64,000 nt of DNA from Pelomyxa schiedti (lineage: Eukaryota > Protista > Evosea). Below the pieces are notes generated by a model. The model had not been told where the DNA came from. It did not search any database and saw only the letters and a program-made list of their open reading frames with translations. Where the stretch lies: positions 1-64,000 of the forward strand of contig JAHLWZ010000351.1 in the NCBI GenBank assembly GCA_020536535.1, read 5' to 3'. The translations under genes and the position numbers were made by a program. Shown piece by piece: positions 3,767 through 56,595 of the stretch (within the stretch, counting starts at the first letter, position 1; each line of letters begins with the position of its first letter).

Positions 3767-6700
3767 ATGTCACACCACCACTGCTCAGCCCTGCCCACCT
3801 CCGAAGCCCCGAGCGCCGACGCCTGCCTAGCCAGGCTCCCCAAGCCCCTGAAAGTCCCTTTCGAGCCCGTCGCCATCATCGGCATTGGCTGCAAGTATCC
3901 CCAGATCCTCGACCCCGACGACGCCTGGAAGGTGTTCTCGCAGGGCCTCGACGTGCTCACGCGCTGGGAGTCGCCGGACCCCACGCTGACCGGCTCCCGC
4001 GGCTTCGTCGACGACGCCGTGGCCTACGACTACAAGTTCTGGAACGTGGTGTACCCGCGGCTCCAGGACCCGCAGATGTTCCTGCTCCACGAGGTCGTCT
4101 ACAACGCCCTCGAGAACGCCGGCTACTGCCCCACGATGGTCGGCAACCTCCCCGGCCGCGTCGGCGTCTACGGCAACATGGGCCCGTCGTTCTACTCGAT
4201 CACCTGCTCGGCCGGGACCATGGGCCCCGAGGAGAACACGACGCAGACGGCCAAGATGAGCATGATCGGCAGCTCCTTCTCGACCTTCAAGAGCCTCGTG
4301 TCCCTCGCCTCCTTCATCCACGCCCACGGGCCCATCCTCGACATCGCCAGCGCGTGCTCGTCCTCCGCCTCCGCCGTCTGGATCGCGACGCAGCAGCTGC
4401 AGCTCGGCGTCATCGACTTGGCCGTCACGGGCTACGTGACGCTGGCGTGGCCTCGCGAGCCGGTCCTGGGCTACAGCAACACGAGGAAGGGGCTCTACAG
4501 CGTCGACGGGTACATCCGCCCGTTCGACCGCAGGCACTCTGGGTTCGTGCCGTCTGAGGGGGCCGGGTCCTTCGTCCTTAAGAGGCTCGCAGACGCTGTT
4601 GCGGACAACGACGTCGTCATGAGCGTAATTGTGGGAGCCGGGCAGTCTTCCGACCCGTTCATGCTGCCGTCCCAGGAGGCCATCAGCGCCCCAATTGTGT
4701 GTGAGTGTATTAGGGATGCTATGCAGTGTGCTGGAATCAAGAGCGGTGATGAGATATCTTACATCGAGTGCCACGGCGCAGCTACTACAGTGGGTGACTT
4801 CGCCGAAATCACAGCTTTGAACGCGGCGTTGCAGGTCCCTGGAAAGTCCTCGTTCTGTGCAATTGGGTCTGTAAAGGCTAACCTTGGCCACATTGGAGGA
4901 GGGGCCGGAATTCCTTCGCTTATGAAGGGTACACAAATCCTTATGCACAACTTCATCCCACCACTCGCTAACTTTGAGGAGCCTGAGGAGGCCACCGCTC
5001 ATTTCCTAAGCCAACCCGGCTGCCCTGTTTACATTCCCAAGGTTGGCCACACCCCTGCTACCCCTGTCAAGTACGTTGGTGTTCAGGCCTCATGCCCTGG
5101 AGGAGGCACACACTTGATGCTGGCGAAGGCGCCACCATCAAAGTTCCCGTTCGTTGAAGCTGATGAACCCCGCCGCACTTTCCTTCTTTGCACGTCAACA
5201 AAGACCGCAACTTCCAACACTGTCTTGTCAGACAATACCGCTAAGCTGGTTCCCTCCAAAGTTGTTGAACAGGGTTTGGAATTTGCCTTCAATGCCGAGT
5301 ACATATTACAGGCAAGAAGAGAGCGCTACCCGTTCAGAAGTGCGGTAGTCATGTCCGTTCTCCCAGGTTGTTGTTCTTGTTTTTTCTTTTCTATCCTAAT
5401 GCTTTTTGCCACCATACAGGTGAGGCTCCTCTGGCTGAGCGTATCCAGTGCACCCCAGCAGTCAAAGGAAACTTGTCCATCCAGGAGAATGTTGATGTGG
5501 GCTTTATCTTCTCAGGGTTCGGAGGCTGCGGGCAGCAATGCGCCAAGGAGTTGTATGTTCAGTTCCCAGTTTTCAAAGCTGCCTTCGACAGATGTGCCGC
5601 CTGCCTAAAGGAAATCTCTGGGGGATCGTTTGTACTTACTCCTGACCAGATCGATCTCAGCCTCGAGCCCGTCTCTCTAGCTGCCATGTCGTTTGTTACC
5701 ATGCAAATATGTGTTTCCGAGCTTCTTATTTCTTGGGGTATTGTGCCAACAGCCGGAGTCGTATGTCATAGTCTTGGTGAGTATCCTGCTGCTGTTGCTA
5801 ACGGTGTTCTCACACCGGAGGAGTGCCTGAAAATTACCAAATTCCGCTTTGAAGTTCTTGCCAAGCTTCCTAAGATAAACACACTGGTTGTATCTATGAT
5901 TGCAGTAAAGCGTGTCTCTGATATGGTGGCTGCCCTAAACAAGGCCGATCCGGCTGACCCAGCTGAAATTACTGTAATCAACAGTTCTACTGTTTGCATC
6001 GTGAGTGGCCCAGACGCCAAAATTGAAGCGTTGACTACACAGCTTCAGACAACCACATGCAAAATACACAAGTTCTCACCTGTTACTTCACATTCTGCCA
6101 AAGTTGCCCCAATACTTGATGAATTCCGAGCATACCTCACCTCGCTTAACCTCGGTGCTACCGCTCGTCCAGCCAAGTACAAGTGTATAAGTGGTCTCAC
6201 AGCAGACTGGGGAACCGGTGCTGAATTCTCCTCAGTTGATCATTACTGCAATGTCCTTGCAAACAAAGTCAATTTCCACCAGGCAGCACAGAAACTCATG
6301 AACACTTGGATCAAGAAAACAGCCTCAGTTGATCCCAAGAAGACCCGCAAGCTCATCCTCCTAGAAATTGGCGCCAGCCTTGTTTCCCACGTCCAAGATA
6401 TTGCAGCCCTTGAGTGCGGCGCCGTCGCAAGAGCAGCCCCCGCGGCCTCCGTCGTTCCCATTTCACTCTTCCTTCACCACCAAAACAAAACCAGTAACGC
6501 TGCCCAGCAAATACTCACCGCTCTGGGCACAGCATGGACCCACGGAATGGAAATCAACTGGCAGAACTACCACACAACCAACGGTGTATGCACAAGACAC
6601 GCTGTACAGCTCTGCCGCTATCCATGGGAACGCCAACCCGTTACATGGGTTCCACCAAAGGGTGCAAACATCACTCGCGACGAGTACTTTGAGAAGCTCC

Positions 6701-7011
6701 TTCAGTATCCTGATGCACCTGTTGCAACTGCAGCAAAGAAGGCAAGAATCCTTCCCACAATTCCCGGGAATGCACTTGGTGCAAAGGAAATGGGATTCCT
6801 GGCTGACAAATGGGAGGCTTTTGCAGGTGATGTGATTGATGCAGATGCCAACTTCTTCGACTTTGGCGCTACTAGCATGGCCGCTATGAGAATGGTAGAG
6901 TCCATTAATAAGGTGTTGGGTCTTCAGCTTCAGGCCTCTGCCTGGCTCCGCGAGCCAACATTTATCGCCCTCGTGCAAGCTTACTCCAACCTCAAGACCC
7001 ACAAATCCTAA
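3767..7011 (+). CDS. Type I polyketide/fatty-acid synthase-like single module KS-AT-ACP (about 1063 aa)
   Basis: KS triad in ASACSSS, ECHGAAT and KANLGHIG. AT motifs CHSLGEY and SHS. Linker RYPWERQ. ACP motif FFDFGATSM. A 53-nt GT-AG intron (5367-5419) joins the 613-aa and 547-aa ORFs in frame. Confidence 0.9.
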
Positions 7012-35961: not shown

Positions 35962-38900
35962 TTAGCTTTGCAGAATTCGTATTATTTTACTGATTGGGGG
36001 TCTCCCTTCAGACTCAAACACCCAACACTCACGCATCACTTCAAGTGCCCAGGGTGGGCATTCCCAGGCTTGGCCAGTGCAGTGCCATTCAGCCGTTTCT
36101 GGTGAATGTAGTAATTCATATGCCTGTTTGGAAAGTAGGTCAGCTCTTGCTTGCCGGATGGATTCTTGTTCATTCCCAGGTGTAGTGGTGCTTGAACCCG
36201 TTGATGCTGATGTTGCCGGCTGCTCAGGAGTTGGTGCTGGTGGTTGTGGTTGCACGTGGCCGGCGGCTATGGCCGATTTTACGGCATCGCGCTTCATTTC
36301 GTAGCGTTCTGTGTGTGCAATGAGCTTGCAGTAGGTTCCGGACCTCCGCAGGTGATCGTAGGGTTCTGTGAACGGGTCTACAATGCCGCGGCAGAGGGTA
36401 CCGAAATTCCACACGTCGGTGCCTAAGTCACTTTGTGGTTGCATTCTACAGGTTTCTGGCGCCCACAGTTGAATTGGTAGGTCGCGCAGGAGGCATTCTT
36501 GCATTCCTGCACTGACTTGGATATCGGCGAGTCCAAAATCCGCAATCTGAGGGCCAGTGAGATAAATGTATGTAAAAGTGGTGGCCAGATTAACCTTGGC
36601 CCATGGTCCGGCTTCTTGGTTGAGTGAACATATAAATACATTTCCTGTGTAAACAGCGTGTTAGGGCACGTTGTCAAGAGAAAAGAGAAGGAAGAAACCA
36701 GGGTGCAAGTCGCTGTGCTTCAAAGGGGGCTTTTGGCTGTGCAGGTGGAAAAGACCTTTGGCTGCATCCAAAAGAATCTTTTTCCTAAGTGACATTGGTA
36801 ACACTACTTCCATCATTTCGCGTTTCATTGACAATATTTCTGAATCGCTGTATGGCAGTGGTGAAGATGGTATTGTGGCTCTCTTTACCATCTCTTCAAT
36901 TTTATGTGAAATCCTTCTGAGAACTTTGCCGTACAAGTGGCTGAGATCTGGTCTGGTGAGTGATGTCACTCCAAGAAACAGATGCAAGCCTTCTGGAATG
37001 GTGGGGCGAACAAACTCCATATACATGGATATTGGAAGGAGGCTGACACCATAAAACCGAACAATGTTTTCGTTCTTCTTAAGACTGCTCATGACTCTAG
37101 CCTCGTGGAGAAATTCGCCAAGATCGGAGCTGTTCCCAGAAGAAATGTGCGGAATCTTGACAGCAATCATTTTACCCTTATACACAGCTCTCATTACTTT
37201 CCCGAAAGAGCCGGAGACGGATGAAATCTCTTTTCTCTTGCCAGAAGATGCGGAAAGAACAGAGTCAGCTGTCAAAGAGAAAGTTGGAGGGAAGGTGGAA
37301 GCTGGTGATTCACTTTGAATGGATACTGGGGAAATTGAGGCAATTGGCGCATCATCCAGGCCACAGGTGATCTTCTCTGAAGTCAGATTTTCTGTCTCTT
37401 TGAAATTCGTGAACAATGTAACCTCTTTTGGGTCTATAATTGGAAGGCTCTCCATGGCAATGTCTGGTGCTGCCGCAGAGACAGTGCCTGTATGCCCAAA
37501 TTTGCAGTGTAAAGAGCCGCTAGAACATATGGCATCAACACACTCCCGTAAACTGAACAGATGTGTGGAATAATCCGTTGGGTTAAAAATGGATTCCATT
37601 ATGGGATTCAGGGATGTTGTTGTTGAGTGTGAATGGTGAAGTAAATTGGTTCCCGTCATCAAGCAGCCGGGGCATGCGACCCATTCAACAGCTGCTTTCT
37701 TCATGGCAGAATTGCACATAGATAAAAAGCAATTGATTACACACACGATTTGAGTGATGAGCGGAACTGAAGAAGATGCTGGGGTCAGAAGAGTAGCAGT
37801 AGATTTCAGCATGTTGTTGGAGGTCTGTGCAGTCGCCACATCCAAGCCTCTTGGCAACTCAGATATCCAAACTTGAACAACAAGACATTTACTTTCCTTG
37901 TCTAGGGTGATAAGAGCCACGTGTTTCGCAGTTCCACACAGCAGACTGGCTGAGAGGTGTGACTTGCTCGCCTTAACTTCTTCGAGTTGCGGAATTCCCA
38001 TTATGCGAATCTGTAACCTAAAGTATGATCAAAAAAAAACCTTAGAATCTCTTTGTTTAGAAACCTTGGAAAGAAGACAACCGGAATGAACTCAAACTTA
38101 TATACTCTGCCTGCGATAGAAACAGGGGTAAAGCTCAGTACCGGAGCGGCAATAGGAGCCGCAGGGAGTCTTAAAGGTATTAAAACCCTCTGATTGTTCA
38201 ATTTGTATGCTACTTCAAAACTGAGAAGCAACTGGAGCAAAGTCTCGTGCATTGATTTATCACCAAACAACTTTTCATTGAATACATTATGAAGATCAGT
38301 CATCTTCAAAACGGCGTTGTCCTCCCAGGATGAAGAATCACAGTTGTTAACCACAGTTTTCACAATTTCCAGTATAAACTCGTGTCGCAGGACGACAATA
38401 TCTGAGAGTGATTGGGTGATCCCTGTATGAATAAGATGACCACTTCTAAAGTGTATAATCATCCCGCTATCGGCAAGGAAGTTGGCACAACTCAGAAGTT
38501 CCATTTCAAAGTTCTCCTTTTCATGCTGTGAGCAGGTAGAGCTTGCGCCACCACTTCCAATTCCATTAGCTGAGGCAATAGAGCTAAATTCACTCCATTG
38601 CAATATGTTGGTGTGACCACGAATTTCTCCAAGACTGTTGTAAAGTGCAACCCACTTTGGCGGAACATGGATGGGCTTGATAATCCCCTCAATGTGTTGC
38701 GCCAACATGTCAATGCACTTAGCGGATGGCTGAACAAGGGGTTGATCAATCAGGCCGCCAGTGCCTTTGGATGTCATGGCAAAAATAGCAGAGAACTTGA
38801 AAGATGGAAATTTTTCAAACATAAGGCGACCGATATTTAGAAGTGCTTCAAAGGCGGATTTCCTGTCCTCTCCATATGATTCCAAGTGCGTGCCCATCAA

Positions 38901-41900
38901 TATGACCTTTTCGTCATGTTGTTGTGAGGAGCGAACCTCTCGGATTTGCCTGACCCAGGACTCAACTTGCGCGACAACATCAGTTGTCGAAAGAGATTCA
39001 GTGAGTTTGGTGATCAGAGCAGAGCCCGTAATGCTTTGAAATGTGGGATGAGTTACAGATGGAGATGCAGATGTCCCAATGGGGCCAACGTGAGAAAGAT
39101 TGATGACAATAAGGAGCACCGAGTCAGAACCTGCACATGCAGAAAGGGAGAGGTGGTCAAGACTAGTTATAAGCTTAGGAGGGTAGTAATTCTACTTCTG
39201 TTGGGGATTTTTTTTTTTTTTTTGAAAAAAAGTGTAAGTGAAGGATGAAGAAACTTGGAAAAATCATACAAAAAAAGCTGAGGAATTACTTCAAAACTGT
39301 AACTTGTGCCTAACTTCAGAGTTAAGAAAAGTTGCTTGGTATCGACAGCACACTTAAATCCCAGACAGTCCAATCTGAAGCCCCAGTACTGCTTCCTGAC
39401 TTCTTGGATTTCTTTCTTAGTTTGTTGGAAGCACGTGTGAGGGCAGATGTGATTTCCAAATGCCCTGAATCATCAGCACCCAGGACAAGTACTTTGTGCT
39501 TGCGCCATTGAATTGGAGGAGAAAGGTCACCAAATTGGAGGAAGCGTTTCACATCGCACCACGAGGCACATTTCACACTTGATGTTGTTGGAAGATTGAT
39601 TGTGGGAGGAGGAAATGAAACCTTGCTGGGAGTGAGGAAAGTGGGTTCCCAGAGAAATTTACAGACTCCATTTTGTGCAAGGAAGAAGGCAAGTATTCCA
39701 GATAATTTCCTCTTAGATCCAAACTACGGCACCTCAACTCACCAATCAATTTGTGAGGCAAATCACGCAATCCAAGATTGGCCCAATTTACATCCGAGTT
39801 AGACAGAAGATTTGATAGGCAGAGCAATTCTATCGCGTCCCAATTTCTCCATTTCATCCAACAGCGTGAAAACCCCAGCAATGCTTTGTAGCACGTCCCA
39901 TGGGATGAAGACTTCAACAATTTGAGGAGGTGTCGTGCTTCTTGATGCACAAACCAGTCGGCTGAAATTGCCCGTTTTCGGATGAGCAACTCTATGACTT
40001 GATCAGGCGAAGCATAATTGCTGAGAAAGGCCTGGGCAATGAAGTGCCGTGTCTCCCAAGACGGGAATAAGCTTGATGTCGCCGCTGTTGACTTCTGTGG
40101 CACAACTGAATGTGTCTCTGCAACAGTTTCTTTATGAGCATGGGAGGTTGCCATCGTAGCAACAAAATGTACTCGATGTTTCAATGCATAATTGAGCACT
40201 ATGCACAGTTCCTGTGTCGGTGATGTTTTTTGCGCTAGTGGCGGATTTTGAATAGATCCATCTGGGTGCAAACACAATTGAACGGCTTGGCGGATAGAAG
40301 CGTGCATATTACGAGCGCTATTGACACTAAGATCGATTTCCAATTTGGCAAGGACGGCTTCGCAGGAACCTTTATTTCTTGCAACCATTTCTTTAACTTC
40401 TCTGGTTGCTGTATGGAGGCAACAGTTAGTAGGGGTATATGGCTGAAAAACTTAGATGACCCACAATTTAACTGAAGAAATGTAAGTGTTGAATTCGTTT
40501 CCAACAGAGTCTTGAAGTACACAGACCCCGCAGGATCAGAATTTTCATCTGTCCTAAGAAGTGAGATATTGATAGTATGGATGTGGCTATTGTATAAAAT
40601 ATGTGCATGCAAACCAAGATATAAGCTGCCCAATGTGTCGTTGGTCTGCAGCCCATTGGCCAAGCACTCAAGTGAACGAAGAGTTGAAATATTTCCTATC
40701 CCACAGAACAATGTTAGACTAGAACTGTTTCAATGGTCATGGTACCAGAGAGATTGAGTTCGAATAAAGTATTGTTATGTGCCAACATGTCGGCCATAGC
40801 TAAGAGCCCTTTATCCTCGATTCCATTCTCTTTGTAAAAATAAATAAGTGAATCAACATCGAAGAAACCACTTGAAAGATTCAGCTTGGAAATGCTCGTG
40901 TTGATTAGAAGTGCCTCAGATAGACTGCAAGCACCTTGATCTTTGATATCATTCCCTTTTTTTTATAAGTGCTTTCGTTTTAGACCCTTAGTTCTACAAT
41001 ACAAATCCAAGACACATAGTATGTCGTTCACTTTTAAAAGTTCTGCAATGAAACTGGCTCCCTTGAAATCACACACATTGCCTATAAATGTATAGTTAAA
41101 AGGAGAAACTCTGTGCCCTCTGTTTTCTTACAAGATAGATTTAACTCGGTAACAGTGAAATTCTCCATCAAGGCTTCTGTTATATGCTTCATACCAAAAG
41201 AGTTGATATTGTTATCTGGTGTAATTGGTGGGTAAAGTGTAAGTCAAGTGTACTCTTACTTTGTAGTTTGATGGATTGGAGTTTTGACTTAGAAATCACA
41301 GATGCTATCTCAATACAAAAATCAGCAGGTGGCAAACTCCTGTTAGCTAAAAAAAAAAGTGTAAAAGTAAGGAGGAAAGAGAAAGATTCGTACAGGATCC
41401 CTCTTTAAGAGAAGAGAGGTCCAACTTCTTCAAGCGAGGCAGTGAGACCAACACTTGTGAAATTTCCTTGAACCCTTCCATTCCAAGATGGCTCCCTGAA
41501 TAGTGAAATTATGAGAAAAAACAAACCTACATACACGGATGAACTCACACCAACAATGCTCAAGTTGACAAGCTGAGAACCACAAAGGCCAGTGGATACC
41601 ATTCCAGCATGCGGTGACAACATGTAAACATCTATACAGTGATTCATATGAGTTCCCAACAAGTAGTACACAGAGTTGGGGGAAAAAAACACAAACCCAA
41701 ACGTACCAACAAAAAATAAGCCAAAAAGTGGGTGTGGCAGAGTTGAATTAGTACGAAGAGCACATCGTAGGTTCTCAGCCATTCCAGAGTTGAGGTTGTA
41801 ACCTTTCAAACTCGTTTAGAAAAAAAAAAAAAAAGGAAAAAAGAAAAAGAGAATCATAGGCAAAGCAAGCACCTTTCAGTGTTACTTCACGTGTATCACC

Positions 41901-42348: not shown

Positions 42349-45300
42349 TCAAGGAGCAGATGAGGCCACCAAGAGAGTGATTCTGTGAGCCAACTTGCAT
42401 ACGATGCCAATCGGAAGTGTCGGGAACAAATCCATAATGTCCCTTGCTTCCAGTTCAACAAATGCCCATCCCGGTGGCACCATGGTTTCACCAACACTAT
42501 TGTTGGAAGTTGCCGAGGGTGGTACTGCTGTTCCTTGTTGATGTGATTCAGGTGTGGATGTTGTGGCCGTGGCGGAAGTAGCTTTTGGAGCTGGTGATGC
42601 CGACTCCCCTGGATTGTGACTGCGGGGGACTAGTGCCTCTATTTGTTCTTTGAACCATTTCTCTACTTGTTGCGGTGTCCATTCAATAACAGCGGTACCT
42701 TGTTGTTGCGTTCCGCAGTCAGTTTTGTCGGCGGCCACTGGTGACGATTCCGCGGACACGGGGGGTGCGGTCGTGGTGGTGGCGGTTGCTGTTGCTGTGG
42801 GCGTGGATGCGGATGCGGAACCAATCACGTGGTGGCGAATGAAGTGGCGAAGTGCTTTGCGTGGGAGGAGCTCCCTGATTCCAAGTTGACTCAGGACTGC
42901 TTTGTCATCGGGGAGGTGGTTGAGGGCTTCACCATCCATCATATTCTTCATGAATAGTTTGCAAATTTCTTGTTCCTTGGCATCTGAACCTGTGATAGGA
43001 AAACCGAAAATGAAGGGCAATGAGGAGGGTGGTTGTTGGATGAGGGAAAGGGAAAGAGTTGGTATGTGTGAGGGACTTCATTTTGGTTTGCGATTTTAGT
43101 GTGTACGTATTGATTTGGTAACCTGGATTGCTTTCATGGGACCAGGAAAAGAGATTAATCTCAGGAATGACCAGCCCCGCCACCTCGGCGGTTGTCAGCC
43201 CCGCGAAATTCTTCTTGGCGAACAACGAGTTGATAGTTTCGTGATCTCTTCTTGCGGAATCGAGTTCCCTCTGAATGTCAGCCCTCTCGAGGCAGAGCCA
43301 CGTGAGAAACTCTCTGTGTGCACGTGACTGCACTACTGACTGGCGGAGCTTCTCTTCTGATTCCAACAGCGCATTCTTCAGGAGTTTCAGCTCTTCAACT
43401 GCGGCACCATGCAATTTCTTTGTTTCCTCTACCTGGGTCTTCGCACATTCTACTGATTTTCCCCCTTCAGATACATTTCGCAAACTTTTCAAGGCTGAAG
43501 AGAGGGAGTGAATGAATGAAGGAAACTGCTCTTCAGCCAGCTTCGATACAATCCCCAAGGCCTGATTCAGTAAGATGATGTTGTTCGACGGGCAATGAAG
43601 ATCTTTCTTTTCCTTTTCCTTGTGAGTGTCCATATATTAGATGAGAGGAAGTAGTACCATTCCAGAATAAATGCTATCACATTGAGGAACCGACATCACG
43701 TTCTCATCTATGCACGAAATTGCAGTCGTGGTTTTTTTTGCTGTGCTTAGAAGGAACCCTTCCAGGGAATCACAGGAACTGGAAGTTGAAGTGCAACAAA
43801 TTGCCGGTTTTGAGGATGCATTTGGAACGATTTGTGCAATTGCGCAAAGAGGTGGTGTCACTTCAGCTGCAGCAAGAACAGAAGCCCCATTAGAATTGAC
43901 GATTTCATGAAGGTTTTCGTTCAGTTGCTCCCAGGTCACCCTGCTGATTGCCTGAAGCACCATTTCTTTGGGGTTTTGTTCTTGTGTTGATAGTAGCTCA
44001 CGGGTGGCAGTGGGGATGTCACGTACTTCTGGCTGTTTCAATGCCCGTTCAATGTGTCCATTAGGATCCTGTGACGCAGTCTTGCTCGTCGAAGCAGTTC
44101 CATCGTTGGGGGCTCCGTTGTTGCAATTTGGATCAGTTCCTTTTCGAAAGCACTCTGATTTCAAAATGGATATTTTCGTTGAAAGGCGCCTGAGATCTCC
44201 AATTGCAGTCAACCCAAGGGATTTCAAATCACCGTGTGTGAGGTGTACAAACGCCCATCCAGGCATCAAGAACCGTGATTTGGATGTTCCAGGGAGGGTA
44301 GTTTCCTTCAGGAGTTGGCCAAACCCTTCCTTTGCCAACCACTCCCCAACTTGATCTTCCGTCCACGACAATGCTGTGTGGTTGTTGTTGCAGTTCCAGA
44401 GCGGCGGGATGATTCCAAACACTTTGACGCTCTCAACGACGTGGAAAATGGCCTTTCTGTGCAACAAATTTGTGAGGCCGAGATCCACCATGTCCTCGTT
44501 CGTGAGTTGTTCAAGTGCCTCCCCGTTCACGTTGTTACTCAAAAGTTTCTGACGCAGTTCATCCTCCCTCTCTTTGCCCTCTGCGACGTCATTGCCGCTA
44601 TTGGCACAACTCGGTTGGTGGTATGATGGCATGAAGAGGTGCAGCTCAGGGATGAGAAGGTTCGCAACCTCCTCTGCCGACAATGCCTGGAGTGTCTGGG
44701 TTGATGCAACCTGGGTCAGTTTGTTCAGTTGGGTTTGAGCCATTCCCAGACCTCTTTTGATAGCATCTTTCTCTTTGTCCAACCACCAGATGATCTGTGC
44801 ACAGGATCTTGCAGATCCCATGGCTCGCTTCAATTCTTGTGTGGCCTGATTGTCAAAGTCTTTCATTTGATTTTCGAGGGTGGTGACTTTGGTTTGGGTG
44901 TCTGTGAGCTTGGTGGCGGCAATAATGGTCCCAGCGGAATCTCTCTGAGCAGTTTCCTTGGCACCTTGGCAGTGCTTTTTGGCCACCTCCAACCACGCAC
45001 CGAGGATTTGAAATGCAAAAGAGAGTGCAGAGAACCTCTTGGAGGGTCTTTTCATCACCTGATCTCTCACTTCACAAATGGAATTCTGTGGGTTTTGTGA
45101 GAAATGCACCAGGATAAGAAAGGCCAAACCAGTTTTGAAAGTATCCTTGGGGTTTGCTGCTGTCGTCTCAGGTGGTCTGTGATTGATTGATGTATTTCTG
45201 CGTTGACTGCATCCTTGACAGTGGTTGGAATTTCTCCACTCTGTACCAGGCACAAGCAACAAGTTGACTTTCTCGGCAGTGGTGTTTCTCCATCGCCAAA

Positions 45301-46470
45301 TAATGGTGGGTCTGTCGTTATGCCACCCAGCAGTCCAGCATTAACTGCTGTGGTTGATATGCTCAGAAGTGCCTTCACCAACGGTGACGTGTTGCCTTCA
45401 AGTGAACTCTGGAACTTTTGTGGGGGGGCAGCACCACAACAAACCAGCAGGTCCACGACACTTTTCTGGCTCCGTGATCCAGCAATGGCGAGTGGCGTGG
45501 AACCATTGGATCTTGCCTTGTTCACGTCCGCGTTTCCCTTGGTGACGAGGAACTCAACAACGTTGATGTGGCCATTCTGACTGGCAACGTACAGCGGTGT
45601 GGCACCAATGTCGGATCTTGCCTTGTTCACGTCCGCGTTTCCCTTGGTGACGAGCAACTCAACAACGTTGATGTGGCCATTCTGACTGGCCACGAACAGC
45701 GGTGTGGAACCTGTGTCGGATCTTGCCTTGTTCACGTCTGTGTTTCCCTTGGTGACGAGCAACTCAACAACGTTGATGTGGCCATTCTGACTGGCAACGT
45801 ACAGCGGCGTGGAACCTGTGTAGGATCTTGCCTTGTTCACGTCTGCGTTTCCCTTGGTGACGAGCAACTCAACAACATTGATGTGGCCTTTCTCACTGGC
45901 AACGTACAGCGGCGTGGCACCAATGTCGGATCTTGCCTTGTTCACGTCCGCGTTTCCCTTGGTGACGAGGAACTCAACAACGTTGATGTGGCCATTCTGA
46001 CTGGCAACGTACAGTGGCGTGGTACCATCGTCGGATTTTGCCTTGTTCACGTCTGCGTTTCCCTTGGTGACGAGGAACTCAACAACGTTGATGTGGCCAT
46101 TCTCACTGGCAACGAACAGCGGTGTGGAACCTGTGTCGGATCTTGCCTTGTTCACGTCTGCGTTTCCCTTGGTGACGAGCAACTCAACAACATTGATGTG
46201 GTTGTTTTCGCTAGCCCTGAACAGCGCGGTGAGACCCGCCTGTTTCCCATCACACATTTTGGTTTGCGCATACGCATCGACCACATCCGACATGGACGCG
46301 GTGCCGAGGTCACCACACCGCGCATTGGTTGGTGTGGTCGTCGTGGTGCCAGGTCGCGACACCCGTGCCCCTGTGGTGTCGAGGGACTGCAAGATCTCCC
46401 CAACTGTCTTGGCGTCGCCTCTCGTAGACGCGTCCCACAGCAACTTGGCTGCAGCCGAAGCATCGCCCAT
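42349..46470 (-). CDS. Ankyrin-repeat, coiled-coil and multi-SAM-domain protein
   Basis: 7-8 ankyrin repeats, then two copies of a coiled coil plus SAM-SAM module (WTEDQVGEWL, GEALEQL, PGWAFV). An inferred 39-nt intron (43619-43657) links the ORFs in frame. Confidence 0.75.
45495..46237 (-). repeat. Coding tandem array of seven near-identical 105-bp units (35-aa ankyrin repeats)
   Basis: The motif ggtgacgag recurs at 45541, 45646, 45751, 45856, 45961, 46066 and 46171, an exact 105-bp period. Confidence 0.97.
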
Positions 46471-48455: not shown

Positions 48456-51400
48456 ATGGGGACGAATGGAGGTGATGTGAACAGGCCGGGAATGGCTCAG
48501 ACTGTGACGTTTGTTGAGAATCCAAATAAACGCAAGAGGAAGCAATCTCCACTCAAGATACTATGCAAGGGGTGCAGTCGTGATGTGGGCAATTTCATCT
48601 ACCTCGGGCCTGAGGCTGTGCCGCTAGTGGCTTGCTTTGACTCTGAGTCATGCAGCCTTATTCATCCCGACGGCTATCGTGAGTTGGCATCTAAATCAAA
48701 ATGGGGCATGATCATGAAATCAGCCAGATTTCCTAAGATTGTCAGTGTTGACATGACTTCTCTATCTGCTCTAGTCACTGGTACTCTGCGTTCCACTGGT
48801 GCCATTGACCACCAAGAATTGCCATTGGTGCGTGAAACTTTTGAGAATGAAAGTGGGGAGGGAGCATTTAATCCCTGCTCGTACACTGTCACTCGCCCGC
48901 GCCTGTATCAGATGGAATTAGCTCTGCAAGCTCTCCGAGGAAACTCCATCATATATCTCCCAACAGGTACTTCTTTCCCCAGGACTTTTGCAATAGCATC
49001 ATGACTTTTCCGCAGGTACTGGAAAAACGTTAATTGCGGTTATTGTCATGAGACACATGCTTACATTGAACCCTGATAAGAGGTTGGCTTTCATTGTTGA
49101 CCGAATACCTCTAGTCTACCAGCAAGTACTGGCTCTTCACAATTCTCCTTTGATTCTAAGGCATATTTAGGAAGAATATTTTTGCCGAGAATCTTCGATC
49201 AAGTCGACAACGTTGACACTTTCAAGTGCAACACCTCAAAAAGTTCAGAATAGCACTAAGTTCATTTTCTCTACAGCCCAGATTTTTTTAAACATGCTGC
49301 AGTATGACTGCCACAAAATACTGTGTTATTTTAATTCTTTGTAGCTCGGACACCATCAGATTATCCGATTTTTCCCTGATTATTTTCGATGAGGCCCATC
49401 ATGCCAAGGGAAATCATCCGTACACACGCATACTTGATAGATTTGGACCCGTACCATTGCACCTACGTCCGCTTATTTTAGGGCTCACAGCATCTCCTGT
49501 TGAAGACCGCACACTTGAAGGGACAATTGAGTCACTTCTGAGTCTGAAAAAAGTCTTCTTTGCAGACAGGATAGTCACTGCACAAGTGTTCCGATCAAAT
49601 CTTGATGACCTCACAAAGCACACAGATTGTTCTTTTTTCTATACATTACCAAGTGAGGTTGGTTGCAAGAAGTTCAGTTCCTGTGTGCTGATATTCCGAA
49701 AAGGATGAAAACAGGTTGCACATAGAACTCGAGAGAGCAATGAATTATGTGGTAAGCAGTAACTTTGAGCTGCAAAGATACAAACCCGACAACCTCCTGT
49801 CATTTATCGAGATCAGGCGACTAGATGCTGTTCTGGACAAAGTGGTTACCGATCCCCAGTGGATAGCTTCAAATATATCTGCTGACCTCCTGGTTCAATT
49901 ACAGTTTATGAAACAGTTGTGCACCGCAGCTGAAGTCAATAGTGTGCTTGGGCCAGCAAGAGCCATTAAATTTTTACAGCTCAATACTGACGAAACATTC
50001 CGAGGCCTTGTCGCTAGTGCATTCTCAAGGGTAATTACAACTGGTCACTCTGCCAAACTCACAGCTCTTGTACGTGCCGTTGAGGAAACGATAAAGCAAA
50101 AGGGGTTCATTGATGTAAGAGTCTTGGTATTTGTGAATACCAGAAAAACAGCTAGATGGTTGTTCAGCATTCTGGAATCAGAGATACCCTCACTTGCACC
50201 ATTGCGTGCTAGCTTGTGTGTGGGCCATGGAGGTGTCGATGGAATGGAATGGTTTGGCGAACAAGAACAAGTTCTACAGAAATTTAGACTTGGCACATGC
50301 AAGCTACTAGTTGCCACTTCTGTTGTGGAGGTTCCTTCCCACTTTTCCTGTTGTGAGTTCTCTAACCTAATAAGGAAGGACTTGATGTCCCTGCTTGTTC
50401 TCTTGTCATACGCTTCGATCCTTCCCGGAGTTTCATTTCCTTTGTCCAAAGTAGGGGAAGAGCACGATGTTCCAAGAGCCAGTTTATCGTTATTTGTGAT
50501 GCACGTGTAGAGGCTCACCGAAGTATTGAGATTTTCCAAAGTGGGTGTATCACTTCCAGATTCTACCCCACTTGTAACGCAACACAGGAAACCTGGATAA
50601 TGCATCAGAAATACTGTGCCCAGACGATTGCACTATAAGGGAGCTCTGTTCTCGATTTGTAAATCCTAGCTTCAGCACCCCTACTTCTACTACTGTGGTA
50701 ACAGCACAGTCATCCCCGCAACGACCTATTTCACATTTAGAAGCCATCACATCCACCGACCTCTCTCACAGTACTAGGAATACCTCCTCCCTCAGCATTG
50801 GCTTTTGTTTGCAATCCAAGAGTAATGATGAAGCAGATATTTGTGCACACTTTTCTGCTGTTGGAGCAGTAGTTGCACGAAAGGAGAACCTACCTCCTCT
50901 TCTATTATTGGACGTTGGTAACCAATCCCCGTTTGGAGTTTACCAGCAACTCATCAGGTTTATGGCAGTTTCCTTGCCTTTTTCTTCTAACCTCTGAACT
51001 CTGCAGGAATCCTTCACTCATGCATCTGCACAATCAGGCTATTTGGATGCGAAGACCTCACTTCAGGGTTCACACACGCTCCACTGAGGGAGTACAGTTA
51101 CCAATAATGTCAATAGATTTTGGAGTTTTTGACAAACTCAGTGCTGTATTCTCACCTATCACATCGTGGGAAGTCAATGGAATTTCCTCTTTTGCAGGTG
51201 TGGAGATGTTGGTCACACTGAATACTACCTCCACCAGTCAGACCACTTTACATTTTACGCCTCTTGGTTTGAATGATTGTGTGATCTTTTCACACCAACT
51301 CGATTCAGAAGCGGGCTTCTTGTTTGTTCATCTACCCCTTCGTCACTGCCCCTTAATGGTAGATTCCGAAGGAAGACGCTCAGCAGGAAATGAACTCCCC

Positions 51401-54400
51401 AATAGAATCTTACAAACACTAAACTTTTCATCCTGCCTCCGTCTTCAGTTTCATTTTAGCAATGACGGAAGGGAAGAAGAGGCTTTGCGTTCATTTTGGG
51501 AAGACGTTGGAATATCTGTCTTTGACTGTATGGTGAAAGTTGGTCCTGAAATGGAGAACCCCACACGAAGCTACTCAATGCAGCTCTTCTTTGATCAAGC
51601 TGGTACTTTTACAGAAGAACTTTCTGTAGCATCCAGGAGTTCTTCGACCAATGAAAACACCGTTTTGGTACCTGTCATAGTTTTTACTCCTACTCGGGCA
51701 GTACTTCTTCCTCACCAGAAAGTTGCATCAAACCGGATTGTTAGACAGTATGGTGCATGCAACTTCATGATAGCGCACTTCAGAGACGAGAATCTTGATA
51801 GGTTGCCTCCTCAAGAACCTCTTCTTCAACAGAGAGTATCTGACATCTTGACTGCTGGTATGGAAATTTCTGGAAAACGATTTACGTTCTTGGGTTGCAG
51901 TGCATCCCAACTGCGAGCCAATTCCTGTTGGATGTGCTGCCTTGATAGTGACTCCGTCCGCGAGAAAATGGGCGACTTTTCCAGTATTAAGTGTGTTGGA
52001 AAATATCTGTCACGGATTGGATTGTCTTTCACATCGACAACTGATGTGGGTTGCTTTGAACATAGTGTCATACCTGACATTGAACATGGAGGGTTTACAT
52101 TCAGCGACGGAATTGGAAAAGCAAGCTTACATGTAATGCAATCCATTTTTAGATTACAGCATCTGGAAGAAATTCCAAGTGCAATACAAGTTCGCTACAG
52201 TGGCTGCAAAGGTGTTCTAGCTCTGGATCCCACCATACCTGCAGATGGACCCCAAATTGCCATACGACCCAGTATGATAAAATTCTCCTCCCCTTTAAAG
52301 ATGTTGGAGCTAGTCGGAGTTGCCCAGAGCCTCCCACTATACTTGAACCGCCAAATCATCATGCTGCTCTCCAGTTTGGGGGTGCCTGACTTTTCCTTCA
52401 CTGCCATTCTCGAAAAAAACATGCAATTAATGGATGACATCCTGACAAATGAAGAAGTGGCCAAGATGGTTCTCCAGCGTCACACAGATCTCAGGGTCGG
52501 TGCTCTATCTGCAGCTGGAATTCTTTTTCTCGAGGAACCTTACCTTTTCCGACTGATTCATGCCATTTACCGGACCGAATCAAAGGAGTTAAGGAGGAGA
52601 GCACGCTTACACGTGGAGAAAGGGGCTACGTTAATGGGAACTTTGGACGAAACACGTACTCTGCAAGAAAGACAAGTCTTTGTATCATATCGTGGAAACA
52701 CCAGACAAACTGGGACTGTCCTTGTTTGGAAAAATCCTTGCCTCCATCCTGGCGATGTGCAGGTTTTTACTGCCATAGATGTACCCTCACTGCATCATAT
52801 GCATGATTGCATTTGTTTTCCATCCTGTGGTAGCCGTCCCCATCCTAATGAGTTATCTGGCAGCGACTTGGATGGAGATTTGTATTGCGTGTGTTGGGAC
52901 GAATCTTTATTCCCTCCAACCACTCACCCTCCCATGGAATCCGAGCCTCCGGCTCCCCGTGAGAAAAATCGGCCAATAACCACAAAGGATCTTCACAAAT
53001 TCTTTGTGAAGTACCTTGCCAACGAGCAGCTAGGCGTCATCAGCCACGCTCACCTCGTTCTTGCAGACCGCTGTGACTTGGGAGCACTGGATCCTCGTTG
53101 TATTAGCATTGCCAAGATGCATTCCATCGAAGTGGATTTCCCGAAAACTGGCTTGCATGTGGAGCTGCCCAAAGAGCTCAGACCCACTTCTTATCCAAGT
53201 TACATGGAAAAAAGTGATCGGAAATCGTATGTGAGCTCCAAGGTACTGCAAGTGCTCTACGACAGGTGTGAGGGAATGGTGGAAACCCAGAGCGGTATCG
53301 GCACCAATAGCATTGTACAACCAGACAGTAAAATGCTAGTCTCTGAATTTCTGGTTCACGTACAGTGGGCAAAAGGGCTCTACAAAGAGTATTGCTCACA
53401 ACTCCATTCCACCTTGAGGTTATATGGTTGTGGAACGGAAGCTGAAATAGCTACTGCTTGTCTGGACAAGCAGTACTCCCCTCTGTTTAGCTTCCAACAA
53501 GCAAAAGGAAAATTTCAGAACCTCCAAAAATATTTTGCTGGTCTTTTTAACAGCTCTACGTGCAGCGATTCCCCAGATGTCCGTGCAGCCAAAGCTAGTG
53601 CCTGGTATTATGTTGCTTATAGTAGCAAGAAGTCAATCCTATCATTTGCGTGGTCAATAGAATCTGTGCTCACCGAACTTATTCGTTTCAAGCTTCACCA
53701 AAGTGGGCAGCCATACATTCCTAACAACAGTAAAACCCTGGCCTTTGCTCAATCTGTTTTTGAATCCCTGTGGCATCCCTCAGAACAATTCACATCCTAC
53801 CTTGACCGGGAAGCTGTAGTACACAGTGTAAAAATTGCAGTTGCTTCCGTGCTACCTTCGGCCGAGGTTCATTTGTATGGTTCTTCCTCTTACTTCTTAT
53901 TTCGGGAGGACTCTGACATCGATATATCGATCTCCACTTCAACTTGCGGCAGCGTGGAAATTCTTACGAAGATTCTGCCTCATGTAACCTTTTTTTCCCC
54001 AAGTGCGCATATAAATCAGGCCATTCCTCTGATACGAGCCGAGCTTCATGGATTTGGAGTTGATATAACAATTAACTCTTCTGGTGTTGATAAGTGTCAT
54101 CTCCTGCGCAATTATATTGCGTCATATCCACCACTCTTTCTTATTTTGCACTTGATCTCAAATTGGGCACATAATGCAGGGTTGATAACACATCACAAAG
54201 ACTCTCCTTTTACCACTTTTGGACTATGTTGGGCAGTAATACATTTTACCCCCTGTTTGACCTCAGTCCTGCCAAGTTGCTCAGAAATACAATGCAAAGG
54301 CCCCCAATCTGACCTGGAGGAATGGTGGAAAACTGTGTCCCGTGAACTTCAGTGCTCTTGGAGGGAAAATGCACACCTAATCACTTCATCAGTGAACCAG

Positions 54401-56408
54401 TTTCTATCCAACTGCGCCGAGAGCAAAGTTTTGGAGGTGGGGCTTCCAGATCCGATCGAGAAAGGAAAGTTCATTGTAGGTCCCTTGAGTGGTCAGAACC
54501 TATCATTAGTCAGGAAATGCGCTTCGTCTGCTTATCATACCATTCTATGGTGTTGGAATGCAACAATCTTACTAGAGTTAAAGCATACAAATGCAGTAGT
54601 CAGGGTCCCTGTGTCCACTATTTCTTCTTTTGAAAGCATCTCAGATCTCATCTCTTGCCTGACAAGCTTCGAGAAAGTGAATGTTTGTACCCCAAATGTA
54701 ATCATAACCACCTGAAACTCCTCCGCCGCTTAAAGGTCAAGCAACTCTCCATTGATTCATCTGTTACTGTTCTGGGAATTGAAGGTGAACCACGAGCAGT
54801 TCGTGCCTGCGTGAACCGCCTCCATCAGTTGGCCTCGACGTGTAGACTTCGTGGACAACTCATATTTATTCAAGGATCAACCGTTTTTCTGTTCCAGGGA
54901 TCTCTTTTCGACTCTGACAAATTGGGTTTTACAAAGTACATGGGCCGAAAGCAGGTCTTTTCTTCCTTTTTTCCTGAGTCACTTCTTACCCTACTCCAAA
55001 GCCAAAACATCGTGGACTCAATGCCCATGAAGTTCGACTTCTTGCACCCGTTGGTGGAAATGACTGGGAACAAGTTTCATATGGAAAACTTCGTAAAACG
55101 GCGTTGCTTCAATTCGAAGCTCTTAAGCAAAGTTCTCTGCACCACAGGTATATGACTTTTGGTTGAGTCAAGATTGCTTTTTAAACTTACTGAAGTCATG
55201 TGGACTTCTTCGTGCGCTTTGGGAGAGGCTATGTCATGCACCTGGAGACATTGGACTCAACTGAAGAAATCAATATTTCGGCACTTGAAACAAGTGTCTC
55301 AAAGGAGCACAACCGTAAGCGGTACAAGGAATACACTGATAGACAATCAAAGAATGCATCTTCCAATGGTAATCCACCTTTTGATCTAAAAAAAGCCGAC
55401 TAATTTTGCCAGCAACTACAGAAATCAGGTTAACTAAGAAAGTCCGTGTCGGCAAACCAGTGGCAGGAGATTCATCAGCAGCACCCAAAACAACTGGCAC
55501 AAAGAAACACAAAAAAAAGGGTCCTTGCAGTGCATTTGTTACTGTATTTGAAGGCACACTTGACGATATTCTTCCTTTCCTAAGGTTTCGCTATTCATCC
55601 ACATTTCGTCTGTGTAGTAAATACCCCCGTTTTAGTGCTCACGGATTCAACTCCGAGCCACCCAGTAAAACCTATACAACGACAATGAGACTTTCCCAAG
55701 GGCACAGAGAGGTATGTATAACTTACGCCATGGTTTAATCACCGTTCACACTCTGCACCTTCATTCAGTATGTTGGGCACCTGGATTCTAATTTCAATTG
55801 CGTGGAACTCTTCCTCTCTAGAGTGCAGTGGCTTTCTGCCTTTCATTTCTTGTCTCATCCAGGGTACTAACAGCTGCTCTCTTTGACCCTATAACCCTTC
55901 TCTTCTCTTCTTGTCTATACTTTCAGTGGCATTCAGCCTCCGTGCTCTCGATTTTCACTGGTCTCAACAGAACGTGTTCCTGAAGAGGATCCACTTTTTG
56001 TGAATCTTTCAAGTGCCCCAATCTGCGTTCAACAGCAGGGACATATTGTTGTTTGCTCAAAGCTTGCTTCAGTGGTTACCCACATTAGAATATTTGATAC
56101 CTGCAAAATATTCTGCTGCCAAAAGAATGGCTTCAAAATATACATGTACTTCACCACCGTTCATTCCGAGAGCGTACCTGATACCACAGGCAGATTCCTT
56201 TTTTCGGTGGGTGCAAATTTCCCTCCATTTCTTATTCACTGATTGTTTTCCAAGGAAACCTGGAATGAAATTGAATTTCACATCCCACTTCGTGACACAC
56301 TTTGTGCAACCGTACTTGGAGACCCCTATTTGCAGGAATTATGTTGCCGCACCCTTTGGGAACTCACAAAGCAACTCAACAGTGCTCTGTCTCCTGATAC
56401 AAAAATGA
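48456..56408 (+). CDS. Fusion of a Dicer/RIG-I-type DExH helicase, a eukaryotic RNA-dependent RNA polymerase and a Pol-beta-type nucleotidyltransferase (TUTase/PAP-like), plus an unassigned C-terminus; 3' end uncertain
   Basis: Helicase motifs: TGTGKT, DEAH (49388), TASP, VFV and QSRGRAR (50447). RdRP motifs: QVRYSGCKG, KNPCLHPGD and DLDGD (52865). NTase motifs: YGS...DSDID (53879-53923) and VDITIN. In-frame GT-AG introns link the helicase to the exon starting at 51007. Confidence 0.9.
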
Positions 56409-56595
56409 CTGAGGGATAGATAAACACTGATGTTGCTTGGCCAAAAAAAAAGTTTATTTTCCCATACTTCCATTTTGTTTGTGGTTTTTGGTTTCTGGGC
56501 AAATTCAAGGAGAGGGCACAACTACAATGATGAAGCACTGAGAATTACTGGTGCCGGGTGGTAGCACGGTAGGGCTTTACTTGGTTCTCCCGCAC

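What the first reader, a model, noticed from the sequence alone, without database searches (positions are those of the whole stretch)
48456..54715. Helicase, RdRP and TUTase/PAP-like nucleotidyltransferase in one gene: a possible single-chain RNAi amplification complex
Seen: a DExH helicase with Dicer/RIG-I-type motifs splices in frame (introns ending 50373, 50587 and 51006) into one uninterrupted exon of about 3.7 kb. That exon holds both the RdRP catalytic DLDGD (52865-52879) and an intact Pol-beta NTase signature (GS, DxD at 53915-53923, third Asp at ~54062), followed by a PAP-associated-like helical region. The RdRP-NTase fusion therefore does not depend on splicing guesses. Established: Dictyostelium RrpA-C carry a Dicer-like helicase. 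Characterised RdRP complexes keep these activities on separate proteins (S. pombe Rdp1/Hrr1/Cid12, Tetrahymena Rdr1/Rdn, C. elegans EGO-1/DRH-3/CDE-1). Inference: one chain could bind or unwind RNA, tail its 3' end and copy it. I know of no characterised protein with all three domains, but cannot search to confirm.
Basis: partly seen in the sequence, partly recalled or inferred. Interest (0 to 1): 0.88.

Follow-up and report, generated by a model that had tools for sequence, protein, structure and literature searches.

The report
Five-module RNA-copying enzyme of an amoeba
The gene is real and encodes a helicase, an RNA-dependent RNA polymerase and an RNA-tailing enzyme in one chain, but it is longer than reported, ends in a fourth functional module resembling the trypanosome guide-RNA 5'-triphosphate binder RESC2, and belongs to an old, widespread family rather than being unique.

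Summary
The window is from Pelomyxa schiedti. The gene is annotated as KAH3763783.1, 'RNA-dependent RNA polymerase 1', 2394 aa.

**What holds up.**
- an intact Dicer/RIG-I-type DExH helicase;
- an RdRP with DLDGD;
- a Cid1/TUT4/GLD-2-type terminal nucleotidyltransferase (TENT) with GS, DxD and a third Asp.

RdRP and TENT share one reading frame in a 3.7-kb exon.

**Corrections.**
- The stop at 54715 lies inside a 53-nt intron. The gene runs to 56419.
- The last ~450 residues form a triphosphate-tunnel (TTM) barrel. By profile and by predicted fold it is closest to trypanosome RESC2/RESC1, then to Cet1/Pct1 RNA triphosphatases.
- The architecture is not unique. It occurs in Archamoebae, dictyostelids, chytrids, an oomycete and liverworts. 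Lancelet and bivalve RdRPs keep a degenerate form.

**Literature.** Helicase-RdRP fusions are described. I found the TENT only in one figure legend, and the TTM/RESC-like module nowhere.

**Likely function (inferred).** A single-chain small-RNA amplification enzyme that also holds the 5'-triphosphate end of RNA.

**Verdict.** It is an ordinary member of a known family, but that family's domain content is under-described.

The parts
48456..56419 (+). Whole gene. The public model has 17 exons and gives 2394 aa. It is more likely 16 exons and 2409 aa. Introns are 43-63 nt, GT..AG.
   Evidence: P0121 (KAH3763783.1, Pelomyxa schiedti) maps exactly onto the window.
48891..50649 (+). Dicer/RIG-I-type DExH helicase core, spread over exons 1-7. 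GTGKT is split by intron 1 at 48966/49016. DEAH is at 49388-49399 and QSRGRA at 50447-50464.
   Evidence: Pfam ResIII 6e-21 and Helicase_C 1e-15. PDB phmmer: ancestral Dicer helicase 3e-50, DCL1 1e-45, RIG-I and LGP2 about 1e-33 to 1e-37. Motifs.
51007..54682 (+). One 3676-nt exon that holds both the RdRP and the TENT domains.
   Evidence: Exon map. The open frame runs 50873-54715.
51683..53266 (+). Eukaryotic RdRP domain, with the catalytic DLDGD at 52865-52879.
   Evidence: PF05183 E = 5e-160. PDB: Arabidopsis RDR2 5e-100, QDE-1 1e-19. Motif position.
53295..53339 (+). 45 nt annotated as an in-frame intron, but probably coding (GIGTNSIVQPDSKML).
   Evidence: All 10 aligned homologues have residues here, and the xPDSxL motif aligns.
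53696..54661 (+). Cid1/TUT/GLD-2-type terminal nucleotidyltransferase (palm plus central helical domain). GS is at 53879-53884, DxD at 53915-53923 and the third Asp at 54062-54064.
   Evidence: PF22600 at 31.5 bits, above cut-off. Family profile against PDB: TUT4 9e-30. AF2 pLDDT 80, Foldseek TbTUT4 7e-10. Motif table.
54683..54735 (+).
   Evidence: Exon map. The Marchantia homologue aligns downstream at 54757-54948.
54638..54846 (+). Short alpha-beta-beta-alpha module with weak KH-like similarity. The assignment is uncertain.
   Evidence: Profile against PDB gives KH domains at E about 0.05. Pfam KH_PARP14_8 (2e-4) and KH_1 (1.6e-3) match in 1 of 13 members each. Secondary structure.
54859..56392 (+). 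Triphosphate-tunnel (TTM) beta-barrel domain, RESC1/2-like, in exons 10-17, with a Lys-rich disordered insert. Q2007 (54895-54897) sits where most family members have the single Glu of 'FEGS'. E2345-x-E2347 is at 56267-56275.
   Evidence: Family profile against PDB: RESC2 1.6e-7. AF2 pLDDT 78. Foldseek: RESC2 1.4e-11, RESC1 3e-11, Pct1/Cet1 about 1e-4, then CYTH/TTM enzymes. Motif table.

Best explanation
The gene encodes a roughly 2400-residue RdRP of the Dictyostelium Rrp type, with four recognisable functional modules on one chain:
- a Dicer/RIG-I-like DExH helicase;
- a cellular RdRP;
- a Cid1-family terminal nucleotidyltransferase (TENT);
- a RESC1/2-like triphosphate-tunnel barrel.

A weak KH-like linker lies between the last two.

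**Shown.** The reading frame, the domain identities, the catalytic motifs, and conservation of the architecture across four eukaryotic supergroups.

**Inferred mechanism.**
- The helicase engages or remodels the RNA template or duplex.
- The RdRP copies the template. By analogy with other cellular RdRPs, the products carry 5'-triphosphates.
- The TENT adds untemplated nucleotides to a 3' end of template or product, the role that Cid12, Rdn and CDE-1 play as separate proteins elsewhere.
- The tunnel domain holds the 5'-triphosphate end of an RNA, as RESC2 does for guide RNA, rather than hydrolysing it. The family has at most one of the two motif-a glutamates that Cet1p needs, and Pelomyxa has Gln at that position.

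Together this would be a self-contained small-RNA amplification enzyme.
For: - **Gene and organism.** Identity and exon map.
- **Domains.** Pfam. Solved-structure sequence searches.
- **Models.** Structure predictions and fold searches.
- **Conservation of the architecture.** Seen in Mastigamoeba, Cavostelium (a transcript ORF), Heterostelium, Acytostelium, Synstelium, Physocladia, Phlyctochytrium, Plasmopara, Riccia and Marchantia.
- **TENT residues.** GS, DxD and the third Asp are kept in nearly all non-animal members.
- **Tunnel residues.** The basic residues (His, Arg, Lys) and the last-strand ExE are invariant or nearly so.
- **Published context.** RESC2 binds 5'-triphosphate and lacks two of the three Cet1p metal glutamates (PMC10201420). 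D. discoideum Rrp genes act in siRNA spreading and DIRS-1 control (PMC3661229, PMC7192593).
Against: - There are no expression, small-RNA or biochemical data for Pelomyxa.
- I did not check whether Pelomyxa has Argonaute or Dicer.
- In Pelomyxa the TENT helix 'ISNWAHNAGL' has Asn and His where most of the family has K/R and an almost invariant Arg. By analogy with Cid1-type enzymes (from memory, not tested) these contact the NTP triphosphate, so activity could be weakened.
- My assignment of the 'FEGS' strand to Cet1 motif a was read from the alignment and the predicted strand order. It was not confirmed by a residue-level superposition.
- I could not retrieve the D. discoideum RrpA-C sequences themselves. 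Their possession of the two extra modules is inferred from other dictyostelids.
Confidence: 0.65

Rival explanations
1. The TENT module of the Pelomyxa protein is a structural relic with no tailing activity, as appears to be the case in animal relatives. The protein would then work as a helicase-RdRP only.
For: Branchiostoma and bivalve RdRPs keep the fold but have lost GS, DxD and the third Asp, so the module can persist without catalysis. Pelomyxa deviates from the family at two basic positions (N and H in 'SNWAHN').
Against: Pelomyxa keeps GS, DxD and the third Asp exactly. It also keeps the family-invariant Pro, Gly and Lys.
Confidence: 0.2
2. The C-terminal tunnel is an active RNA 5'-triphosphatase. 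It would trim RdRP products from ppp to pp (or p) for loading into downstream factors, rather than simply binding the end.
For: After RESC1/2, the fold matches Cet1/Pct1 RNA triphosphatases. An ExE pair in the last strand is conserved, and most family members carry a Glu in 'FEGS'.
Against: No member shows an ExE in the first strand. Pelomyxa has Gln there, Mastigamoeba Ala and dictyostelids K/R/D. In Cet1p, loss of any one of the three metal glutamates inactivates the enzyme, and RESC1/2 are inactive for that reason (PMC10201420).
Confidence: 0.2
3. The long protein is an artefact that fuses neighbouring genes in the assembly or annotation.
For: The downstream exons rest on prediction only. 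The public model contains at least one doubtful intron.
Against: RdRP and TENT share one open frame. The same order of modules recurs in more than 25 clusters from unrelated genome projects and in a Cavostelium transcript assembly. The spliced C-terminal exons fold into a confident barrel.
Confidence: 0.02
4. The enzyme's main role is not endogenous RNAi amplification. Instead it senses or handles foreign 5'-triphosphate RNA (for example viral RNA), combining a RIG-I-like helicase with a 5'-ppp-binding tunnel.
For: The helicase is as close to RIG-I, LGP2 and MDA5 as to Dicer. RESC2-type tunnels select RNAs by their 5'-triphosphate.
Against: No RIG-I C-terminal domain or signalling domain was found by Pfam. 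Dictyostelid relatives are genetically tied to siRNA production (PMC3661229). This reading overlaps with the main explanation rather than excluding it.
Confidence: 0.1

Closest known systems
Dictyostelid helicase-RdRPs (D. discoideum RrpA/RrpB/RrpC type; here Heterostelium album XP_020433409 and Acytostelium and Synstelium homologues)
   Same: Same order of modules: helicase, RdRP, TENT, tunnel domain. Both are Amoebozoa. The D. discoideum genes are needed for siRNA spreading and DIRS-1 control (PMC3661229, PMC7192593).
   Different: Only about 20-40% identity. The published descriptions list two domains only, helicase and RdRP. I could not retrieve the D. discoideum sequences themselves.
S. 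pombe RDRC (Rdp1-Hrr1-Cid12), Tetrahymena Rdr1-Rdn complexes, C. elegans EGO-1/DRH-3/CDE-1
   Same: The same three activities are brought together: RdRP, SF2 helicase, and a Cid1-family nucleotidyltransferase.
   Different: Those are separate polypeptides (established knowledge). Here they form one chain, and a triphosphate-tunnel module is added.
Oomycete, Hydra and Nematostella helicase-RDRs (Bollmann et al. 2016, PMC4791657)
   Same: N-terminal DEAD/Helicase_C plus RdRP. The Plasmopara homologue P0181 also carries the TENT and tunnel modules.
   Different: That paper reports no nucleotidyltransferase or C-terminal domain.
Trypanosoma brucei RESC2/RESC1 (GRBC2/1) guide-RNA binding proteins
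   Same: Best sequence-profile and fold match of the C-terminal domain. Both have a Cet1-like tunnel barrel with incomplete metal-binding glutamates.
   Different: RESC1/2 are stand-alone mitochondrial proteins that form a domain-swapped heterodimer. They were reported to lack sequence homologues outside kinetoplastids. Here the barrel is the tail of an RdRP.
Cid1 / TUT4 / TUT7 / GLD-2 / URT1 terminal nucleotidyltransferases
   Same: The palm domain with GS, DxD and a third Asp, plus the following helical domain.
   Different: The family has an invariant Lys where TUT4/TUT7 have Asn in 'HNT' (alignment). The nucleotide preference cannot be read from the sequence.

Membership tests
Eukaryotic cellular RdRP (PF05183) | Full-length match to the family profile. 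| tested here: met
   E = 5e-160, profile positions 1-581 of 582.
Eukaryotic cellular RdRP (PF05183) | Catalytic DxDGD loop. | tested here: met
   DLDGD at residues 1363-1367, window 52865-52879.
Helicase-RdRP fusion of the Dictyostelium Rrp type | Dicer/RIG-I-like SF2 helicase N-terminal to the RdRP on one chain, with intact ATPase motifs. | tested here: met
   Pfam. PDB hits to Dicer, RIG-I and LGP2. GTGKT, DEAH, TAS and QSRGRA present. In-frame splicing.
Cid1-family terminal nucleotidyltransferase (TENT / non-canonical PAP) | Pol-beta palm with hG[GS], DxD and a third carboxylate. | tested here: met
   GS 1686-87, D1698, D1700, D1747. PF22600 scores above cut-off.
Cid1-family terminal nucleotidyltransferase (TENT / non-canonical PAP) | Central or PAP-associated helical domain following the palm. 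| tested here: met
   The profile aligns to TUT4/TUT7 through position 259 of 338. The Foldseek alignment covers 326-351 columns of whole TUTase/GLD-2 modules.
Cid1-family terminal nucleotidyltransferase (TENT / non-canonical PAP) | Basic residues of the helix after the palm that hold the NTP triphosphate. | tested here: inconclusive
   The family has K/R-W-[AG]-R. Pelomyxa has N-W-A-H.
Cid1-family terminal nucleotidyltransferase (TENT / non-canonical PAP) | Template-independent 3' nucleotide addition. | not testable with these tools
   Needs an enzyme assay.
Triphosphate tunnel metalloenzymes, Cet1-like RNA triphosphatases | Closed beta-barrel tunnel fold. | tested here: met
   AF2 pLDDT 78, pTM 0.73. 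Foldseek hits to Pct1, Cet1, T. cruzi Cet1, YgiF and ThTPase. This is a predicted fold, not a solved one.
Triphosphate tunnel metalloenzymes, Cet1-like RNA triphosphatases | Three metal-binding glutamates (Cet1p E305, E307, E496). | tested here: not met
   The first strand reads 'FLFQGS' in Pelomyxa and 'FEGS' at best elsewhere. Only the last-strand ExE is kept. The requirement is stated in PMC10201420. The strand assignment was made by alignment, not by superposition.
RESC1/RESC2 (GRBC) 5'-triphosphate RNA binders | Sequence and fold relatedness. | tested here: met
   Profile E = 1.6e-7 over 200 residues with bias 0.0. Foldseek E = 1.4e-11 and 3e-11, the top six hits.
RESC1/RESC2 (GRBC) 5'-triphosphate RNA binders | Selective binding of 5'-triphosphate RNA, and a domain-swapped dimer. 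| not testable with these tools
   Needs binding assays and an experimental structure.

The most novel reading that the evidence does not exclude
An ancient eukaryotic RdRP lineage carries a complete RNA-end toolkit on one chain: helicase, polymerase, 3'-tailing enzyme and a 5'-triphosphate-holding tunnel. The kinetoplastid guide-RNA binders RESC1/RESC2, thought to have no relatives outside kinetoplastids, would be homologues of this RdRP tail, possibly derived from it. That would link the RNA-editing machinery to the RNAi amplification machinery.
Probability: 0.35. Interest if true: 0.8.

Novelty: new member of a known kind. Interest (0 to 1): 0.6.

Why it matters
- **What the locus is.** It is an ordinary, already annotated member of the helicase-RdRP family.
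- **What was overlooked.** Checking it shows that the family carries two further conserved modules that the papers I could search do not discuss. One is a catalytically intact Cid1-type tailing enzyme. The other is a RESC2/Cet1-like triphosphate tunnel.
- **What can be tested.** Point mutants of the TENT aspartates and the tunnel basic residues could be made in the rrp genes of Dictyostelium, a tractable model. This assumes the D. discoideum proteins carry both modules, which I inferred from other dictyostelids and did not check directly.
- **Trypanosome link.** It gives the trypanosome RESC1/2 proteins their first relatives detectable by sequence outside kinetoplastids.
- **Evolutionary hint.** Plant RDR1/6 and animal RdRPs may descend from a larger ancestral enzyme by loss or decay of these modules. 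This rests on an unrooted quick tree only.

Tried and rejected
- **Word-index search with the NTase part** found nothing. The exhaustive HMMER search was needed instead.
- **Third word-index search**, with the Heterostelium NTase region and meant to reach D. discoideum RrpA-C, returned only three proteins. The D. discoideum sequences were therefore never examined.
- **Pfam on the C-terminal 465 residues** gave no family for Pelomyxa and only scattered weak KH hits among relatives.
- **Papers not held.** Two papers I wanted were unavailable: the Burroughs/Aravind RNAi review and Martens 2002. An earlier description of these fusions cannot be excluded.
- **Literature searches.** Searches for RdRP with nucleotidyltransferase fusion, PAP_NTPase or triphosphate tunnel found one figure legend and nothing else.
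- **Gene-fusion artefact.** Considered and rejected (see rivals).
- **Horizontal transfer.** Considered because liverwort proteins are the best NTase hits. The RdRP tree leaves Pelomyxa unresolved among the TENT-bearing rows and gives no support for it.
- **Nucleotide preference of the TENT.** I tried to read it from the motif after 'DP'. The profile alignment to TUTases stops before that region, so no call was made.
Full report
**Origin and gene model**

The C-terminal part of the long open frame is 100% identical to residues 1543-1955 of a 2394-aa protein. That protein is KAH3763783.1, 'RNA-dependent RNA polymerase 1' of Pelomyxa schiedti, an anaerobic archamoeba.

Mapping the protein back gives 17 exons from 48456 to 56419, with GT..AG introns of 43-63 nt.

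The public model splits the big exon with a 45-nt in-frame intron at 53295-53339. In an alignment with ten homologues, every one has residues there, and a conserved xPDSxL motif aligns with the 'intron'. That gives a protein of 2409 aa.

**The 3' end is wrong in the finding**

The stop at 54713-54715 lies inside a 53-nt intron (54683-54735). Two observations support this:
- The Marchantia homologue aligns again downstream of it, in another frame.
- The annotated exons 10-17 continue the protein by about 450 residues.

**The three domains reported**

*Helicase.*
- ResIII/DEAD and Helicase_C pass Pfam.
- GTGKT, DEAH, TAS and QSRGRA are intact.
- The nearest solved proteins are Dicer helicases (3e-50, 1e-45, 2e-38), then LGP2, RIG-I and MDA5.

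*RdRP.*
- PF05183 matches at 5e-160, with DLDGD at 52865-52879.
- Arabidopsis RDR2 is the nearest solved structure, at 5e-100.

*NTase.*
- The single sequence passes PF22600 only narrowly: 31.5 bits against a cut-off of 27.
- A profile of 24 relatives hits TUT4, TUT7, GLD-2, TbTUT4, URT1, CutA, Trf4, Tailor and Cid1, at E from 9e-30 to 1e-15.
- An AlphaFold model (pLDDT 80, pTM 0.74) aligns over about 330-350 columns with whole TUTase/GLD-2 catalytic modules.
- One caveat applies. In the helix after the palm, the family has K/R-W-[AG]-R, whereas Pelomyxa has N-W-A-H.

**A fourth functional module**

The last ~450 residues are conserved in relatives. His, Gln, Lys, Tyr and Gly are invariant, Arg is nearly so, and the last strand carries an ExE. 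Pfam finds nothing there.

- A profile of 13 relatives hits T. brucei RESC2 (8cdp_B, 8fn4) at E = 1.6e-7 over 200 residues, with no compositional bias.
- The AlphaFold model (pLDDT 78, pTM 0.73) is a beta-barrel. Its six best PDB matches are RESC2 and RESC1 (1.4e-11 to 1.5e-7).
- After those come the RNA triphosphatases Pct1, Cet1 and T. cruzi Cet1 (about 1e-4), and then CYTH/TTM enzymes.

According to Dolce et al. 2023 (PMC10201420):
- RESC1/2 are Cet1-like tunnels.
- RESC2 binds 5'-triphosphate ends.
- Both lack two of the three metal glutamates.

In the RdRP family, the strand I take to be motif a reads 'FEGS' at best. It is 'FQGS' in Pelomyxa. So at most two of the three glutamates are present. 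I therefore favour binding over hydrolysis. This is an inference from alignment, not from a superposition.

A short module before the barrel has only weak KH-like similarity.

**Distribution**

The exhaustive search with the NTase part found 57 proteins. Most of the long ones have the same order of modules. Named members are:
- Mastigamoeba balamuthi;
- Cavostelium apophysatum, as a Trinity transcript ORF of 2433 aa, meaning one mRNA;
- Heterostelium album, three Acytostelium paralogues and Synstelium;
- the chytrids Physocladia and Phlyctochytrium, and Sanchytrium;
- the oomycete Plasmopara halstedii;
- the liverworts Riccia sorocarpa and Marchantia paleacea.

Local HMMs built from my alignments show the tunnel domain in the dictyostelids as well (1e-36 to 1e-40). 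They also detect it in lancelet and bivalve RdRPs (1e-25 to 1e-34). In those animals the NTase fold is still detectable, but GS, DxD and the third Asp are lost.

A quick, unrooted RdRP-domain tree puts all rows with an intact TENT on one side of a well-supported branch (SH-aLRT 96). Animal RdRPs and plant RDR1/RDR6 lie on the other side. Pelomyxa is unresolved among the TENT-bearing rows. This is compatible with an old architecture followed by loss, but the root is unknown.

**Literature**

- The helicase-RdRP fusion is described for Dictyostelium, oomycetes, Hydra and Nematostella, with no NTase mentioned (PMC4791657).
- One preprint legend notes a PAP_NTPase domain in two amoebozoan RdRPs (10.1101/2023.10.19.562841).
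- No paper in the searchable library pairs RdRP with a triphosphate tunnel.
- A 2026 review of RESC does not mention RdRPs.
- The animal RdRP survey does not mention either extra domain.
- Two papers I wanted were not held, so earlier mention elsewhere is possible.

**Mechanism**

*Shown:* one chain with an intact helicase, an RdRP, TENT catalytic motifs and a RESC-like tunnel, conserved across supergroups.

*Inferred:* the enzyme copies RNA. It tails a 3' end as Cid12, Rdn and CDE-1 do in multi-protein complexes. It grips a 5'-triphosphate end through the tunnel. That end is most simply the one its own polymerase creates. This makes it a self-contained amplifier of small-RNA precursors.

The rivals are a dead TENT in Pelomyxa, an active triphosphatase, an annotation artefact, and a foreign-RNA sensing role. 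They are listed with their tests.

**Verdict**

The locus is a new member of a known kind. The more interesting outcome is that the family's TENT and RESC2-like modules appear to be essentially undescribed.

Noticed in passing
window 53295-53339: The public annotation removes 45 nt as an in-frame intron. Homologues all have residues there and share an xPDSxL motif with the removed peptide, so it is probably coding.
   Followed up: yes
window 54683-54735: Retention of this 53-nt intron would end the protein at the stop at 54713-54715. That would give an isoform with helicase, RdRP and TENT but no tunnel domain. No transcript data are available to say whether this happens.
   Followed up: no
P0004, P0005 (Branchiostoma), P0006, P0007, P0009 (bivalves): Animal RdRPs of 1760-1948 aa keep the C-terminal tunnel domain and a recognisable NTase fold. 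The NTase catalytic GS, DxD and third Asp are replaced, making it a pseudo-enzyme module.
   Followed up: partly
P0123 (Mastigamoeba balamuthi) residues 2029-2189 and 2194-2643: The first third of the C-terminal module (profile positions 2-164 of 492) is present twice in tandem in the Mastigamoeba homologue.
   Followed up: no
alignment A1, column of P0121 K1757: The TENT family in these RdRPs has an invariant Lys where TUT4/TUT7 have the Asn of 'HNT'. This may bear on nucleotide choice.
   Followed up: no
window 48522-48548 and about 55480-55520: Two Lys/Arg-rich stretches look like nuclear localisation signals: NKRKRKQSP near the N-terminus, and TKKHKKKG in the disordered insert of the tunnel domain. 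This is an inference only.
   Followed up: no
window 3767-7008 (+): Two overlapping open frames carry polyketide or fatty-acid synthase domains (KS, AT, ACP). They probably belong to one PKS-like gene.
   Followed up: no
window 36664-39119 (-) and 43640-46470 (-): The first is a Roco-type gene (COR-A plus protein kinase). The second is a gene with a SAM domain and seven or more ankyrin repeats, directly upstream of the RdRP gene on the other strand.
   Followed up: no
P0119 (ENA metagenome, 1530 aa): A helicase-RdRP that ends about 90 residues after the RdRP domain, with no TENT or tunnel. It groups with the animal RdRPs in the quick tree. It could be a truncated model or a real shorter form.
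   Followed up: no
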